From assembly GCA_044892525.1 (NCBI GenBank), contig CM097886.1:103416001-103480000 (forward strand): 64,000 bases of DNA. The letters are read 5' to 3'. Source of the stretch: Schmidtea polychroa (lineage: Eukaryota). A model generated the notes under the pieces. That model searched no databases and was not told the DNA's origin. It was given only the letters and a program-made list of their open reading frames with translations. Each line of letters begins with the position of its first letter. The first letter of the stretch is position 1. The position numbers and the translations under genes were made by a program. Of the stretch, positions 30,995-46,253 are shown piece by piece.

Positions 30995-31406
30995 AGTAGA
31001 GGGATAGCGGCTCTCTGGGACAAAGACATACCCCCTACCCCCCCCCCGCCATTTAAATTTTTTTTCAAGGTCAAATTTTAAACAAAGACATATGACTCAT
31101 CAAGGTCATTGAAACGAAGACCATGACTCATCCGACGACTCATTCAAGGTCATATGACTCATCCGACGACTCATTCAAGGTCATATGACTCATCCGATGA
31201 CTCATTCAAGGTCATTCTCAAGGTCATATGAGTCATGCTAAATTCTCAGAGTTCCCGCCAATGGTTTTTATTATTTAATAGCTCATTCGAAAGGTATTTG
31301 AATGGTGAGTATTTGAGACCATCGAAGGTCTATGGAGGTTCAATAACCTTCAAAGAGTTCAATGGTATTGGTTACACTCAACATCTCACAAGGGTATTAT
31401 TATTAC

Positions 31407-31437
<31 letters not shown>

Positions 31438-31531
31438 ATTAATATATATACTCCGAGTTTATCCGACAAAATATTTTGTCTCCCTATGGGTAATGCTCAC
31501 AAGGGTACTGCTCACGCTCAACAACTCGCAA
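30995..31531 (+). repeat. Left terminal inverted repeat (~537 bp)
   Basis: The inner 72 bp (31460-31531) recur inverted (69/72 identical) at 54063-54134 and 61576-61647, downstream of polB copies. Confidence 0.75.
31065..31235 (+). promoter_or_regulatory. Cluster of AP-1-type (TGA[C/G]TCA) and NR5A/ERR-type (TCAAGGTCA) sites in a 31-bp repeat within the TIR
   Basis: TGACTCA at 31093, 31124, 31155, 31186, 31198 and TGAGTCA at 31229. TCAAGGTCA at 31065, 31100, 31144, 31175, 31206, 31218. Function is inferred from consensus match only. Confidence 0.55.
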
Positions 31532-31542
31532 TTAATAATAAT

Positions 31543-31887
31543 TCAATCTTTTTTTAACAAATAATCATGCTTCTTATCAATAATTGTCATATTCTTTTTA
31601 TTTTCAACAATAGAGTTATTGAAAACTTCAATATGATCAATCAATTTAATTTTTATATTTTGTATATTTACAAATGATAGTTCATAGCTGTTTTCTAAAT
31701 TCTTCAATCTTTGAGATATTCTTTTTCCTGGGTGCTTTGACCATTTTGGTTTGTCGAGAATATATAAAATATCCATCAACTTGGCTGTATTCGGACAAAC
31801 ACATATTGATTTATTAAAAGACTCCACTGTTATTGTTGTATTGTGTGAGCACACACTCGTTATAATAATTAGCAATATGGTTTTCAT
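31543..31887 (-). CDS. Maverick accessory ORF, 114 aa, predicted secreted glycoprotein
   Basis: N-terminus MKTILLIIITSVCS resembles a signal peptide. Four N-x-S/T sequons (NTT, NKS, NNS, NMT). Confidence 0.55.
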   Translation of the reverse strand: MKTILLIIITSVCSHNTTITVESFNKSICVCPNTAKLMDILYILDKPKWSKHPGKRISQRLKNLENSYELSFVNIQNIKIKLIDHIEVFNNSIVENKKNMTIIDKKHDYLLKKD

Positions 31888-31992
31888 GGTGTATCAAATC
31901 AAAACCTTTCTTTTACATTTATAGTTTATCAACCAATCAGAATCATACGGTATTAGTATAAATAAAACATCATATTTTAAATTATTGTAGAA

Positions 31993-41440: not shown

Positions 41441-41545
41441 GCCCCAAATAAATGTAGCTTGCAGTGAGCATGCATCTACATCTCTTCTCATATAATAATA
41501 ATAATTATCCCAATAAAAGTAGTTTGCAGTGAGCATGCATCTACN
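41320..41545 (+). repeat. Hairpin-containing minisatellite interspersed with (AAT)n; recurs upstream of every polB copy
   Basis: The core GTGAGCATGCATCTAC is visible 8 times (41.3-41.5, 46.6-46.8, 54.3, 61.8-62.0 kb). The rest is masked. Confidence 0.85.
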
Positions 41546-42080
41546 NNNNNNNNNNNNNNNNNNNNNNNNNNNNNNNNNNNNNNNNNNNNNNNNNNNNNNN
41601 NNNNNNNNNNNNNNNNNNNNNNNNNNNNNNNNNNNNNNNNNNNNNNNNNNNNNNNNNNNNNNNNNNNNNNNNNNATATCTTTCACATAGTTAGCATTCAG
41701 CATGCGACTACCAACCTATGATATTAATAATATTAATAATAATTCATATGATTCATTTTAGTTTACAATTACCAATTTCAGATTATTTTACAATTATTAA
41801 TATTTATTTCATTTTTACGGTTTTTTTTTATTAGAAATGAAATAAATATCAATAACTGTTATAGATTTATAACAATAAATATATAGATATTTTATGTAAA
41901 TTATATTAGTCTAATAAAATGTATTAATTAATGTTATTTTTGAACAAATACAATCGAAATGATATATATATTCAAAAATTTTAGAATGTAATTTAATTAT
42001 TTTTTAAAAATTTATTAGGCAAACTATATCAACGATATTGTCAATCCTCAATTGGACATAGCTCTGCATGCCATAAAGTA

Positions 42081-42269
42081 ATGAAGCTTTACTATGGTCA
42101 TAGATTCTATGGCACCAACTTTTTTATTTGCCCCAAATGCGAAACTGCCCAAGATTTAAAATACATAGATTTTTATAAGGGGCATTACACCCACTTAAAT
42201 CAATTTGTATTGAATAAAAAGACCCTTTTTAATATAATTTATGCGAAAACTAATAAGAATAATAATACA

Positions 42270-42349
<80 letters not shown>

Positions 42350-45300
42350 TAATAACAGAAATAATAGAAATAATAATAATACCAATAACAGAAATAATAA
42401 TACAAATAACCGAAATAATACAAATAATAATGATTCAAATAATGGAAATAGTACATATAATAATAATATTACAAATAATGGAAATATTAATAATACAAAT
42501 AATAGAAATATAGATAATACAAATAATAATACAAATAATAATACAAATAATAATAATAATAATACAAATAATAATACAAATAATCGAAATAATAAAAAAT
42601 CTAAAAGACCTGCTGTAAATACTGTTCCGTGTATCCCTACTAAAATTATAAAATTATCAACCATCGTGATAAGTGATGATGAATCTGAATTATTAAATAC
42701 CCAAATAGGGGGTTCGATAAACAATATAGAAAATATTCAAATAGATATAAATGATGAACCTGAAATAGAGATAGATTTAAAGGGTTCCCGTAAAAATATT
42801 CGATTTGATTTAGAACATAAAAACTTAATTCAAATCTCCCTTACGGATAAAATTATAAATAAAATTAATGTGGAAATTGAAAAGATGGGATCTGTAAAAG
42901 TCCAGTTTACAGTTCTTATTCAATTTGAAAAAGATGGAGAAATTAAAGATAATTTCTTTTCAAATAGTGCGAGTGTTTTTTCCGACAATTTTCTTATCGA
43001 TGGTGTGAGTCGATTAAATGAGAAAATTGAAAAATTTACTTATTTAGGTAGCGGATGGAGGGTTGTAAAGATTAAGGAACTTGATTTTATTTTGACCACA
43101 TTTTACCCTATAAGTCGATTAGCTGGCCATAGTTTTATACCTACACCAGCGGCAATATATAAAAAGAAAGCAATTGTAAATGTAAGAAACAATGATAATG
43201 CTTGTTTTATATATAGTGTTTTATCACTATTAAAGCGTGATATAATTTTAAATCACAGGGAGCGTGTTTCCAATTATACTAATTACTTAGACGAACTAAA
43301 TTATGATCCCATTACTGATTGCCCAATGAGGTTATGCAACATCCCGAAATTTGAAAGAAATAACATAGATTTAAAATTGGCAATCAATGTTTTTGAATAT
43401 AAACCCACAATAACAGGGAATAAAATAAATAATGATATAGATTATGTACCTCATCATCCACACCTAAATATAATTCATAGATCTAAGGTTACCGAAGGGA
43501 ATCCTATTAATCTTTTACTCCTACAAGACGGTGATAATTATCATTACACCGCAATTTTTAATTTAAACCGATTAATGAATGGTCATTCAACCATCGAATG
43601 TAATACTAGAATTAGAGTTAGATGGTGCCCTCATTGTTTAAATGGTTTTTATCGGGTCAAAACTTTTAAGGTACATGTTGCATTGTGCGCTAAAAATCAA
43701 ATAGGAACCACCCTTTACACGCTCCCTAAAAATAAAAATTTAACGTTTAAAGATTATTCAAAGATGATTACCCCACCGTTCGTAATATACGCGGACTTTG
43801 AGGCTATTTTACCTGGGGATATAAATCATCACCAAATACACAAGCCAATAACAGCAGGTCTATTATTAATTAACAATTACACTAACACAACATCATATTT
43901 TAATTTTATAGGCTTGGAATGTGTTTTTGAATTTTTAAAGAAGGTGGAGGAAATTGCTGTCACAATTGTCCTCCCGTATTATGAAATTCATGGTAGAAAA
44001 TTCATCAATACTCTGTCTTTCAATGAGGAACGGGAGTTCAACAACTGTAGGACTTGTTATCTCTGTAAACATTTTATAAAGGATAAGGTTAAGGACCATG
44101 ATCATTTCACAGGTAAGTATCTTGGTGCTGCCTGTAGAAATTGCAATGTTTCTAGGAGAATAAACAAACAGGGGTATGACTTACATCACATTTTAAAGTA
44201 TGGTTTGAATGATTTTCCATCTTGGAAATTAAATATCATTCCGACCACCACTGAAAAATTTATATCCTTGATTGTAAATATTAACAAATTGACTGTTCGT
44301 TTTATCGACAGTATGCAATTTGTTAACTCATCGTTAGCAAAGGCAGTTAAAACTCTTTCAGATTTACCTTTAACTTCGTCTGTTTTTGATGGTAGTATTG
44401 TGAGAGCAAAGGGCATATTTCCTTACGACTTTGCAACATCACTCGAAATTCTTGAATCTACTCATGAATTACCACCGATTTGGAGTTCTGTATCTAATGA
44501 AGAATATGCTATCGCCCAAGAAATCTGGGTTCAGCAAAATTGCGAAACAATGTTAGACTATATGTTAACGTACCTTAAATTGGACGTATTCCTCTTGGCA
44601 GATTATTTTCAGCAATTCCGTGCCAAAGCAATTGCTTATAACGGCCTTGAACCTCTAAACTTCTATGGAATTCCAGGTATGTCATGGGCGTCAGCACTCA
44701 TGACATTACAGGAACCTATAGAAGTTCTACAGGATATGGAAATGTATAATTTCTACGAAGGTGGAATACGGGGCGGGTTAACATTTGTTAACAAACATTA
44801 TGTAGCAAGTTCTGAAGATACAGAACTTTTGTATATAGATATAAATAATTTATATGGTTGGGCTCTTAGCCAAAATCTTCCGTATGGTGACTTTGTTTGG
44901 GTGTATGAAAATCTGAATGATGTGTTGAGTGAATGCGTGAATGCCGATATTGAAAACCTTCCATATGGTTATACTATGGAAGTAGACATCAATATCCCTA
45001 ATCGTGTGCATGAATATTTGAATGATTTTCCGCTTGCTCCTGAAAAAATGTGTCCACCTAATTCAAAGGTTGAGAAGCTTATGCTCACGCATTGGCCTAA
45101 GAAGAACCATGTTCTTCATTGGCGGCTTCTCAAGCTGTATATAGAATTAGGTGCGGAAGTTGAGCATGTACATAGAGCAATTAAATTTAAACAATCAACA
45201 ATTTTCAAAACATATATAGATCGAAATACTAATTTACGTTCAAAATCAACATGTGAACTGTATAGAGATCTATATAAATTATTCAATAATAGTCTCTATG

Positions 45301-46253
45301 GTAAATCATTAGAGAATTTGAAAAAACGTATGAATTTGAGGCTATGCAATTCATCAGCAAAGATGATTGTATACGCCTCCAAACCAACTTTCAAAAAATC
45401 AATTAAAATAGCGGATGATCTGATTGCGGTTCATCTTAATAAAGATATTATATGTTTAGACAGGCCTAGCTACATAGGCCAATCAGTGCTAGACCTGTCT
45501 AAACTACGCATGTATCAACTGCAATATAATGAATTGGCAAAATATAGATCCGAATTCTTATGTGATATAAATATCGTTGCCGGCGATACTGATTCGTTTT
45601 TTCTTGAGGTTAAGCACTGTAAGCTAGACACTCTTTTGCCGGCAATGATAAGAGATAATCTTCTAGATACCTCTAATTATGATCCCGCACACCCATTATA
45701 CTCGAGAAACCTTGATTCTGTGATAGGAAAATTTAAAGATGAAAGCAAAGGTCTCGGGTATAAGGAATGGGTTTTCTTAAGACCTAAGTGCTATAGTTTA
45801 TTAGGTGTCAAAGATACTATGAGGGCTAAAGAGGTGAAGTTAATGGGGACAGAGATTGAGCACCAGTCATATTTAGACTGCTACAATAACAACGTAGAAA
45901 TTGCAGTGCCGCAAACTAGGATAGGGACGCGGAACCACCAACTATATACCATCAAAAATAGTAAAATCGCATTGACAAATAACGATGACAAGCGATTATG
46001 GGTGGGGAAAAATAATAGTATCGCATTTGGGCATTATTTTGGGGTTGATGCTGTAGATAATGATCAAGTATTGGATGAAGTTGGACCGCTCTCTGTAGGT
46101 TTCAGTCCAGATTTCGATGAAAGTGATCAAATATTAGAGGAAGTTGGACCGCTTTGTGGAGGTTTCAGCCCAGATTTCGATGATAGTATCGATATAGATG
46201 TTGATATAGACGATATTATATTAACTGATGATGATGATGACGACTATTATTAA
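42081..46253 (+). CDS. polB: Protein-primed family B DNA polymerase (pPolB), copy 1, uninterrupted (1390 aa)
   Basis: Exo I YADFE, CxxC...DHDH...CxxC (endonuclease VII-like) insert, YLKLDV, YIDINNLYGWAL, KLFNNSLYGK, AGDTDS and RPKCY. Also a poly-Asn tract and an acidic tail. Confidence 0.95.

What the first reader, a model, noticed from the sequence alone, without database searches (positions are those of the whole stretch)
30995..46253. Apparently complete Maverick/adintovirus carrying a spliced host-manipulation cassette (Bcl-2, TBP-like, poly-SIM, secreted and degron-like proteins)
Seen: every core virion and replication gene has an open frame, and at least six extra genes lie between the TIR and the ATPase and between the protease and polB. 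Several are visible only after removing host-sized (30-47 nt) introns. Known: Mavericks encode adenovirus-like capsid, protease and pPolB; adenoviruses carry Bcl-2-like E1B-19K and SUMO/PML-targeting proteins; some adintovirus accessory genes have been described. Inference: this element may be an active nuclear virus with modules for apoptosis, basal transcription and SUMO-dependent silencing. I do not know of this combination, with intron-containing accessory genes, being described, but I cannot check the literature here.
Basis: partly seen in the sequence, partly recalled or inferred. Interest (0 to 1): 0.88.

Follow-up and report, generated by a model that had tools for sequence, protein, structure and literature searches.

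The report
Integrated flatworm adintovirus-like Maverick, rearranged
This is an integrated copy of a Maverick/adintovirus-type DNA virus, probably in a flatworm genome. All its core genes are readable, and it carries a real TATA-binding-protein-like gene and a spliced Bcl-2-like gene. It is not shown to be complete or active, and viruses of this kind with such accessory genes have already been described.

Summary
Between 30995 and 46253 lie open frames for six hallmark genes:
- packaging ATPase;
- rve plus chromodomain integrase;
- penton;
- double jelly-roll capsid protein;
- adenain-like protease;
- protein-primed polymerase.

Six or seven extra genes accompany them.
- The TBP-like gene is solid (Pfam 1.6e-14) and is a hallmark of the whole clade, present in 14 related loci.
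- The Bcl-2-like gene is well supported. Its 44-nt intron is shared with a related contig, dN/dS is 0.2, and the joined product aligns full-length with a relative that passes Pfam Bcl-2.
- The acidic three-SIM gene is supported only by coherent splicing and motifs.

"Apparently complete" is not supported.
- Only the left terminus is present, and 46253 is not an element end.
- The polymerase gene is the first unit of a near-identical tandem array of at least four units that runs off the window. Two of those units carry a nested transposon.
- The polymerase is parallel to the capsid genes, whereas it is antiparallel in all relatives.
- The integrase core holds a microsatellite insertion.

The three N runs are intergenic.

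Adintovirus Bcl2 homologues, and TBP genes in related viruses, were reported by Starrett et al. 2021. I file this as a new member of a known kind, of moderate interest.

The parts
30995..31531 (+). Left terminal region. It holds the terminus, ~31-nt subterminal repeats at about 31090-31240, an (ATT)n tract at 31395-31447, and an 80-nt inner piece at 31452-31531.
   Evidence: Array A homology stops exactly at 30994. The terminal 33-mer is unique in the window. The inner piece recurs inverted at 54063-54142 and 61576-61655 at 92.5% identity.
31543..31887 (-). 114-aa ORF with a hydrophobic N-terminus (candidate signal peptide).
   Evidence: ORF only. No Pfam hit and no homologue in related loci. 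Weak evidence.
31993..32513 (+). Bcl-2-like gene. Exon 1 is 31993-32289, the intron 32290-32333 (44 nt), and exon 2 32334-32513. The product is 158 aa with a C-terminal hydrophobic tail.
   Evidence: - Pfam Bcl-2 0.058, below the cutoff.
- A profile of exon 1 against the PDB: the top six hits are all BFL-1/A1, at about 0.05.
- The intron is predicted by my scan and shared with L012.
- dN/dS is 0.20.
- The joined product aligns over 143 aa with the joined L009 homologue, E 1.4e-9. That homologue passes Pfam Bcl-2 at 5.3e-10.
32628..32915 (-). 95-aa acidic ORF with a C-terminal Cys cluster.
   Evidence: ORF only. No homologues found. Weak evidence.
33545..33956 (-). Two-exon gene of about 121 aa, Cys-rich, with a predicted intron at 33859-33904 (46 nt).
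   Evidence: My intron scan joins two open stretches. No family hit.
34031..34468 (-). TBP-like gene, 145 aa, single exon.
   Evidence: Pfam TBP 1.6e-14, 53.9 bits against a cutoff of 22.9, two stretches. PDB TBPs at 1.1e-9. 39-56% identical homologues in 14 related loci.
34568..35194 (+). FtsK/A32-type packaging ATPase, 208 aa.
   Evidence: Pfam Pox_A32 3.8e-7. 58-76% identical to relatives, with no window-specific indels.
35348..35746 (+). Conserved small protein of 132 aa, basic, with a hydrophobic C-terminus. Function unknown.
   Evidence: 32-55% identical to the syntenic ORF in all relatives.
35808..36854 (+). rve integrase with a C-terminal chromodomain. The frame is open, but the catalytic core holds one in-frame microsatellite insertion (10 aa) that no relative has.
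   Evidence: 46-70% identical to relatives. Window-only run counted.
36800..37873 (+). Penton (minor capsid) protein, 357 aa.
   Evidence: AlphaFold2 pLDDT 63.5. Foldseek against the PDB: mavirus penton 1.3e-6, then adenovirus penton bases. 25-36% identical to relatives.
37860..38228 (+). Conserved small virion-module protein, 122 aa.
   Evidence: Syntenic and 49-94% identical in relatives. No family hit.
38225..39448 (+). Double jelly-roll major capsid protein, 407 aa.
   Evidence: - 174 homologues.
- AlphaFold2 pLDDT 90.2.
- Foldseek against the PDB: iridovirus, PBCV-1, mavirus and Sputnik capsid proteins at 1e-16 to 1e-12.
- BFVD top hit is a Cotesia bracovirus-borne protein, 24% identical, 2.8e-28.
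39476..39859 (+). Adenain-like cysteine protease. It is an open stretch of 115 codons with no early ATG. The candidate model is a 5-nt first exon plus a 33-nt intron.
   Evidence: Pfam Peptidase_C5 1.2e-6. The same 5-nt-exon plus 33-45-nt-intron arrangement is found in L002, L006/L008 and L009. The gene ends with its own stop before the N run.
40341..40893 (+). Four-exon acidic gene. Predicted introns are 40390-40436, 40515-40554 and 40633-40669. The product is 142 aa, 30% Asp+Glu, with three hydrophobic-core-plus-acidic-tail (SIM-like) motifs.
   Evidence: The unspliced ORF is 31 aa; the spliced ORF is 142 aa. No homologues found. Its position, upstream of pPolB, matches that of the 'Oncoid' genes in PMC8502044.
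42081..46253 (+). pPolB unit 1. Intact 1390-aa ORF with window-only low-complexity runs (poly-Asn near the N-terminus, acidic tail).
   Evidence: Pfam DNA_pol_B_2 4.7e-27 on the C-terminal part. 52-56% identical over about 1100 aa to relatives. Window-only runs counted.
47310..53610 (+). pPolB unit 2. At least 99.8% identical to unit 1 and broken once by a nested ~2.1-kb transposon.
54856..61126 (+). pPolB unit 3, with the same single nested insertion as unit 2.
62513..64000 (+). pPolB unit 4, cut off by the end of the window.
   Evidence: 42371-43532 matches 62839-64000 at 99.9%.
51206..52300 (-). 364-aa ORF of the nested transposon. The transposon has 14-nt perfect TIRs and an 8-bp duplication (hAT-like features). 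A second copy of the ORF lies at 58722-59816.
   Evidence: No Pfam, PHROG or NCBIfam hit.

Best explanation
The region is a germline-integrated copy (provirus) of an adintovirus-like Maverick/Polinton, in an AT-rich animal genome that is most likely a triclad flatworm.

It belongs to a compact clade known so far only from unnamed contigs in public assemblies. The clade has genomes of about 12-17 kb and a 405-420-aa double jelly-roll capsid protein.

Core genes, shown here:
- a replication and integration set: an Alpha-type protein-primed PolB and an rve-chromodomain integrase;
- a virion set: packaging ATPase, penton, capsid protein, adenain-like protease and two conserved small proteins.

Accessory genes, shown here:
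- a TBP-like gene that is a hallmark of the clade;
- a tail-anchored Bcl-2-like gene under purifying selection;
- short spliceosomal introns of host size, shared with relatives.

Inferred from established knowledge of the families:
- The Bcl-2-like protein delays mitochondrial apoptosis of the infected cell.
- The TBP-like protein redirects or competes for pre-initiation-complex assembly on the AT-rich viral promoters.
- The acidic three-SIM protein, in the position where adintoviruses carry motif-rich 'Oncoid' genes, binds SUMO-modified chromatin factors to counter silencing.

This particular copy is rearranged rather than pristine:
- It sits inside a host tandem gene array.
- Its polymerase segment has been tandemly amplified, probably by unequal exchange between (ATT)n tracts. 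Two of the units carry a nested transposon.
- Its right terminus lies outside the window.
For: - Core gene identities.
- Shared gene order and 46-76% identity with relatives L001, L002 and L006-L011.
- One relative (L006/L007, 12.6 kb) has 60-nt inverted repeats at both contig ends.
- TBP-like gene.
- Bcl-2-like gene.
- Introns.
- Host: the flanking USP gene's best named hit is Schmidtea mediterranea USP8, 52% identical. A planarian genome preprint reports Maverick expansion.
- Array structure, with (ATT)n at the unit junctions.
Against: - No right terminus and no target-site duplication can be seen.
- pPolB orientation differs from all eleven related loci that hold both genes.
- The capsid block and the pPolB block are joined only across two N runs.
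- An OTU-like domain in the PolB N-terminus was not detected.
- The Bcl-2-like gene on its own is below the Pfam cutoff, and no structure was predicted for the joined product.
- The SIM, secreted and Cys-rich genes have no homologues and no expression data.
- All functions of the accessory genes are inferred.
Confidence: 0.75

Rival explanations
1. It is a decaying endogenous fossil. The element was once a virus, is now an immobile genomic relic, and its open frames persist only because the insertion is young.
For: - Missing right terminus.
- Microsatellite insertion in the integrase core and low-complexity runs in pPolB.
- Nested transposon in two pPolB units.
- Atypical pPolB orientation.
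Against: - Every core frame is open, and the ATPase and capsid protein show no window-specific indels.
- A 98%-identical capsid gene and an 88%-identical Bcl-2-like gene occur in independent ENA assemblies.
- dN/dS of 0.2 shows recent constraint.
Confidence: 0.35
2. The architecture is an assembly artefact. The near-identical arrays and the capsid-to-polymerase junction were produced by mis-assembly of several Maverick copies across unresolved microsatellites.
For: - Units are 99.8-100% identical.
- N runs of irregular length sit at homologous microsatellite positions in every unit.
- pPolB strand is unlike all relatives.
Against: - Unit 1 reads through, without N, the tract that is N in unit 2.
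- Units with and without the nested transposon are both present, so at least two real alleles exist.
- Identity to relatives is alike for the two blocks, as expected of one genome.
Confidence: 0.2
3. The small accessory ORFs other than TBP and Bcl-2 are not genes. They are chance open frames and chance GT-AG pairs in AT-rich DNA.
For: No homologues for the 114-aa, 95-aa, 121-aa and 142-aa products in related loci. No family hits.
Against: - Three consecutive mini-introns turn a 31-aa frame into one continuous 142-aa frame.
- The same scan gives no ORF-restoring candidate inside pPolB and none in the ATPase-to-capsid core block under the stricter rule. One search listed one there, inside the already open penton frame.
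Confidence: 0.3

Closest known systems
Adintoviruses (proposed Adintoviridae; Starrett et al. 2021, PMC8502044), Alpha PolB class
   Same: - Animal-associated.
- pfam03175-type protein-primed PolB.
- rve integrase with a C-terminal chromodomain.
- Adenain-like protease, FtsK-type ATPase, penton and double jelly-roll capsid protein.
- Bcl2 homologues and acidic motif-rich genes upstream of PolB are reported for the group.
   Different: - The capsid protein is much shorter (407 aa); the one BFVD entry labelled Adintovirus that it matched is 663 aa and 9% identical.
- No OTU-like domain was detected by sequence.
- A TBP-like gene is a clade hallmark here.
- The paper does not mention flatworm datasets.
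Animal Mavericks/Polintons, for example the Maverick carried in Cotesia bracovirus
   Same: Best structural and sequence match of the capsid protein: R9XLG5, 24% identical, 2.8e-28. Same hallmark gene set. Integrated in a host genome.
   Different: Terminal repeat pair and target-site duplication could not be verified. The polymerase segment is tandemly amplified.
Midsize linear dsDNA viruses with TBP, TRAF and UCH genes (Starrett et al. 2021, Fig. 5)
   Same: TBP-like accessory gene. Relative L002 also carries a MATH/TRAF gene.
   Different: Those were reported from non-animal datasets, and their virion proteins are not recognisably adinto-like.
Adenovirus E1B-19K and other viral Bcl-2 homologues
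   Same: A nuclear dsDNA virus carrying an anti-apoptotic Bcl-2-family protein. This is an analogy from general knowledge.
   Different: Here the sequence is recognisably Bcl-2-like, with BH1/BH2-type segments and a tail anchor. No named E1B-19K hit came back from any search.

Membership tests
Maverick/Polinton | Protein-primed family B DNA polymerase | tested here: met
   Pfam DNA_pol_B_2 4.7e-27.
Maverick/Polinton | Retrovirus-like (rve) integrase | tested here: met
   rve 8.9e-6, below the Pfam cutoff. IS481-type DDE 2.5e-12. 46-70% identical to relatives, whose integrases carry rve hits on record.
Maverick/Polinton | Double jelly-roll capsid protein and penton | tested here: met
   The penton model is of moderate confidence only.
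Maverick/Polinton | Packaging ATPase and adenain-like protease | tested here: met
Maverick/Polinton | Terminal inverted repeats | tested here: inconclusive
   Left terminus present. Only an 80-nt inner inverted partner was found. The outer ~450 nt is unmatched in the window.
Maverick/Polinton | Target-site duplication | not testable with these tools
   The right junction lies outside the window.
Adintoviridae (proposed) | [quoted passage not shown] | tested here: inconclusive
   No Pfam, NCBIfam or PDB sequence hit for residues 200-640. The original definition used structure-based similarity, which I could not run.
Adintoviridae (proposed) | Hexon recognisable by BLASTP against the reference adintovirus hexons | not tested
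   No reference sequence was available by a permitted route. Foldseek gives only fold-level similarity to one entry labelled Adintovirus (rank 15, 9% identical).
Adintoviridae (proposed) | Integrase with a C-terminal chromodomain | tested here: met
   Pfam Chromo 2.5e-4 at residues 330-361, below the cutoff. Relatives carry the same faint hit.
Bcl-2 family | Sequence match to the Bcl-2 domain (BH1-BH2) | tested here: inconclusive
   - Window exon 1 alone: Pfam 0.058.
- Profile against the PDB: the top six hits are BFL-1/A1, at about 0.05.
- Full-length homology to a relative that passes Pfam at 5.3e-10.
Bcl-2 family | Helical-bundle fold | not tested
   The joined product has no reference and could not be handed to the structure tool.
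Bcl-2 family | C-terminal tail anchor | tested here: met
   Hydrophobic 15-mer, mean Kyte-Doolittle score 1.83, in the last 18 residues. The relative has the same.
TBP | TBP-domain repeats | tested here: met
   Pfam TBP 53.9 bits against a cutoff of 22.9, two stretches. One repeat is clear (residues 64-127); the first is shorter and weaker.
SUMO-interacting-motif proteins | Hydrophobic core flanked by an acidic/Ser tract | tested here: met
   Three such motifs in the spliced product. This is a motif match only and says nothing about binding.

The most novel reading that the evidence does not exclude
The window samples an undescribed clade of flatworm-associated adintovirus-like viruses.
- Members still circulate as 12-17-kb linear genomes bounded by inverted repeats.
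- All encode their own TBP paralogue.
- They use host-type mini-introns, including a 5-nt first exon in the protease gene and independently placed introns in a captured Bcl-2 gene.
- If so, this would be the first DNA virus lineage tied to planarians.
Probability: 0.4. Interest if true: 0.6.

Novelty: new member of a known kind. Interest (0 to 1): 0.45.

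Why it matters
- It would tie a large set of anonymous metagenome contigs to an animal host group. That set is 174 capsid homologues and 63 JGI loci, with none in IMG/VR.
- It shows that a virus-encoded TBP paralogue is a conserved feature of one adintovirus-like clade, not a one-off capture.
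- It gives a clean example of spliceosomal mini-introns kept in viral accessory genes and in one core gene.
- For flatworm biology, it documents which virus-derived genes sit in a genome where Mavericks are known to have expanded.

Tried and rejected
Searches that gave nothing useful:
- Exact look-up of ten window proteins in the 15-billion-protein collection: none present.
- Homologue searches with Bcl-2-like exon 1: only two near relatives, so no deep alignment was possible.
- Penton profile against PDB sequences: no hit. The fold search was needed instead.
- IMG/VR scan with the capsid alignment: no relatives.
- Scan of JGI contigs for the spliced Bcl-2 junction: none.
- Accession search for the NCBI assembly that holds L001: nothing.
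- OTU-domain detection by Pfam, NCBIfam and the PDB: nothing.

Ideas rejected:
- A dictyostelid or protist host, which the poly-Asn tracts first suggested. The flanking USP gene points to flatworms, and a GST-like exon read by eye points to animals.
- The 109-aa ORF at 31235-31564 as a gene. It lies over the terminal repeats and a microsatellite.
- The candidate intron inside the penton ORF. The frame is already open there.

Step left out:
- Structure prediction of the joined Bcl-2-like and SIM products. A joined sequence has no reference, and long letters may not be typed.

Slips, declared as required:
- Note 1 and the printed output contain coordinates of the nested insertion inside pPolB units 2 and 3.
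- In my private working I located stops in the 5' region of the protease by coordinate.
- In my private working I also recalled short motif strings of known Bcl-2, TBP, GST, protease and venom proteins from memory.

Full report
**1. Surroundings**

The window is very AT-rich, with GC about 0.3. A self-comparison shows the finding sits between two near-identical tandem arrays.
- Array A (15612-30994) has a unit of about 4.06 kb, 3.8 copies and 99.7% identity. Each unit holds a 302-aa ORF and a 352-aa USP/UCH gene.
- Array A ends exactly where the finding begins.
- Array B runs from about 41323 to beyond 64000. Its unit is about 7.5 kb, and each unit contains the polymerase gene.

Evidence on the host:
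- The USP gene's best named relative is Schmidtea mediterranea USP8, at 52% identity.
- Exons that read by eye as GST-like and YME1/FtsH-like lie further left.
- The host is therefore most likely a flatworm. A planarian genome preprint reports Maverick expansion in that group.

**2. N runs**

These were tested first, as asked.
- 39873-40011 starts after the protease's own stop codon.
- 41057-41319 and 41545-41674 lie between the stop of the acidic gene and the polymerase ATG.
- No reading frame crosses them.
- They sit in microsatellite or tandem-repeat DNA. Equivalent N runs recur at homologous places in every array unit.
- One tract that is N in unit 2 is read through in unit 1.
- Continuity is therefore plausible but unproven. 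I did not look up the missing letters anywhere.

**3. Core genes**

All are open.

| Gene | Evidence |
|---|---|
| ATPase | Pox_A32 3.8e-7 |
| Integrase | rve 8.9e-6, Chromo 2.5e-4, IS481-type DDE 2.5e-12 |
| Protease | Peptidase_C5 1.2e-6 |
| Polymerase | DNA_pol_B_2 4.7e-27, once the low-complexity N-terminus is left out |

The 407-aa protein has 174 homologues.
- A 55-sequence alignment gave a model with pLDDT 90.
- The model matches double jelly-roll capsid proteins of iridovirus, PBCV-1, mavirus and Sputnik at 1e-16 to 1e-12.
- Among predicted viral structures, the best match is a protein carried by a Cotesia bracovirus, 24% identical, 2.8e-28.

The 357-aa protein gave a moderate model with pLDDT 63.5.
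- Its best matches are nevertheless all pentons: mavirus at 1.3e-6, then adenovirus penton bases.

Counts of window-specific changes against relatives:
- none in the ATPase or the capsid protein;
- one 10-aa in-frame microsatellite run in the integrase core;
- several low-complexity runs in the polymerase.

**4. Relatives**

Contigs from ENA, Logan, JGI and one NCBI assembly share a gene order: ATPase, small protein, integrase, penton(s), small protein, capsid protein, protease.
- Identities to the window are 46-76% for the ATPase, integrase and capsid protein, 31-57% for the polymerase, and 25-36% for the penton.
- L006 and L007 are 12.6-kb contigs from two samples, with 60-nt inverted repeats at both ends.
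- L005 carries a capsid gene 98% identical to the window's.
- IMG/VR holds no relative, whereas JGI metagenomes hold 63 loci.
- In all eleven related loci that hold both genes, the polymerase is antiparallel to the capsid block. In the window it is parallel. I cannot explain this.

**5. Ends**

- The left terminus at 30995 is followed by ~31-nt subterminal repeats and an (ATT)n tract.
- Its first 33 nt are unique in the window.
- Only an 80-nt inner piece recurs inverted. It lies downstream of polymerase units 2 and 3 and abuts N runs and an (ATT)n segment.
- An (ATT)n segment also precedes each unit. Unequal exchange between such tracts would therefore explain the amplification. This is an inference.
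- The remainder of the interrupted array-A unit is absent to the right, so the right junction is outside the window.
- Units 2 and 3 are each broken once by a nested ~2.1-kb transposon with 14-nt perfect terminal repeats and an 8-bp duplication.

**6. Accessory genes**

*TBP-like gene (34031-34468, minus strand).*
- Pfam gives 1.6e-14, above the cutoff. PDB TBPs match at 1e-9.
- Homologues are present in 14 related loci.
- It is a clade hallmark, not a recent capture.

*Bcl-2-like gene.*
- Exon 1 alone is weak: Pfam 0.058.
- A three-sequence profile puts six BFL-1/A1 entries on top, at about 0.05. A Schistosoma Bcl-2 homologue follows further down the list.
- My GT-AG scan predicts a 44-nt intron.
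- The ENA contig L012 shares that intron with 1 difference in 44 nt, while the exons differ at 63 of 432 positions. dN/dS is 0.20.
- The relative L009 has a Bcl-2 gene that passes Pfam at 5.3e-10. It carries its own 41-nt intron directly after the Trp codon of the BH2-type segment.
- The two joined products (158 and 163 aa) align over 143 residues at 1.4e-9. Both end in a hydrophobic tail.

*Acidic gene upstream of the polymerase.*
- It needs three introns of 47, 40 and 37 nt to read as one 142-aa frame.
- The product has three SIM-like motifs.

*Cys-rich gene.* It needs one 46-nt intron.

*Protease.*
- It lacks an early ATG.
- The window and three other lineages all offer the same solution: a 5-nt first exon and a 33-45-nt intron.

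*Host comparison and remaining ORFs.*
- A neighbouring host gene has a 41-nt intron by the same rule.
- The 114-aa and 95-aa ORFs are supported only as open frames.

**7. Literature**

Starrett et al. 2021 (PMC8502044) report:
- the OTU-pfam03175 Alpha PolB class and the chromodomain integrase;
- adintovirus Bcl2 and IAP homologues;
- motif-rich 'Oncoid' genes upstream of PolB;
- TBP, TRAF and UCH genes in related viruses.

That paper does not mention flatworms or splicing.

**8. Verdict**

- 'Complete' and 'active' are not shown.
- The kind of element and its types of cargo are already known.
- It is a new, rearranged member of a known kind, from a clade that seems undescribed. Interest is moderate.

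Noticed in passing
15612-30994: Tandem array of 3.8 units of about 4.06 kb at 99.7% identity. Each unit holds a 302-aa Lys/Glu-rich ORF and a 352-aa USP/UCH gene. The array stops exactly at the element's left terminus, as if the element had inserted into it.
   Followed up: partly
14769-15580: A field of diverged motifs (74-89% identical) like the element's subterminal repeats, in inverted orientation, on the far side of array A. No Maverick protein homology lies to its left. It may be a solo terminal remnant of an older relative.
   Followed up: partly
41323-64000: The polymerase segment is amplified into at least four tandem units that are at least 99.8% identical. An (ATT)n segment sits at each unit junction, and an 80-nt piece of the terminal repeat lies downstream of units 2 and 3.
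   Followed up: yes
51206-52300 and 58722-59816: A nested ~2.1-kb transposon with 14-nt perfect terminal repeats and an 8-bp duplication. It carries a 364-aa ORF with no hit in Pfam, PHROGs or NCBIfam.
   Followed up: partly
L009:3534-3574: In the 16-kb relative, the Bcl-2 gene has a 41-nt intron directly after the Trp codon of the BH2-type segment (phase 0). The window's intron lies 16 codons upstream, so the two are placed independently.
   Followed up: partly
32290-32333: The Bcl-2-like intron is far better conserved between the window and L012 (1 of 44 nt differ) than the flanking exons (63 of 432 differ).
   Followed up: no
9567-10289: A 240-aa ORF on the minus strand, in a patch of much higher GC (0.385) than the rest of the window. 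It has a Ser/Thr/Pro-rich middle. It was not identified.
   Followed up: no
4432-4959: An ORF fragment that looks by eye like a hAT-type transposase C-terminal region. Not tested.
   Followed up: no
3072-3697 and 7487-7684: Host exon fragments that read by eye as a YME1/FtsH-type protease and a mu/sigma-class GST. A 41-nt and an 82-nt intron are predicted next to the GST exon.
   Followed up: partly
L002:3952-4941: The integrated relative in a 28-kb ENA contig carries a MATH/TRAF-domain gene beside its TBP gene. This matches the TRAF gene reported for related viruses in PMC8502044.
   Followed up: no
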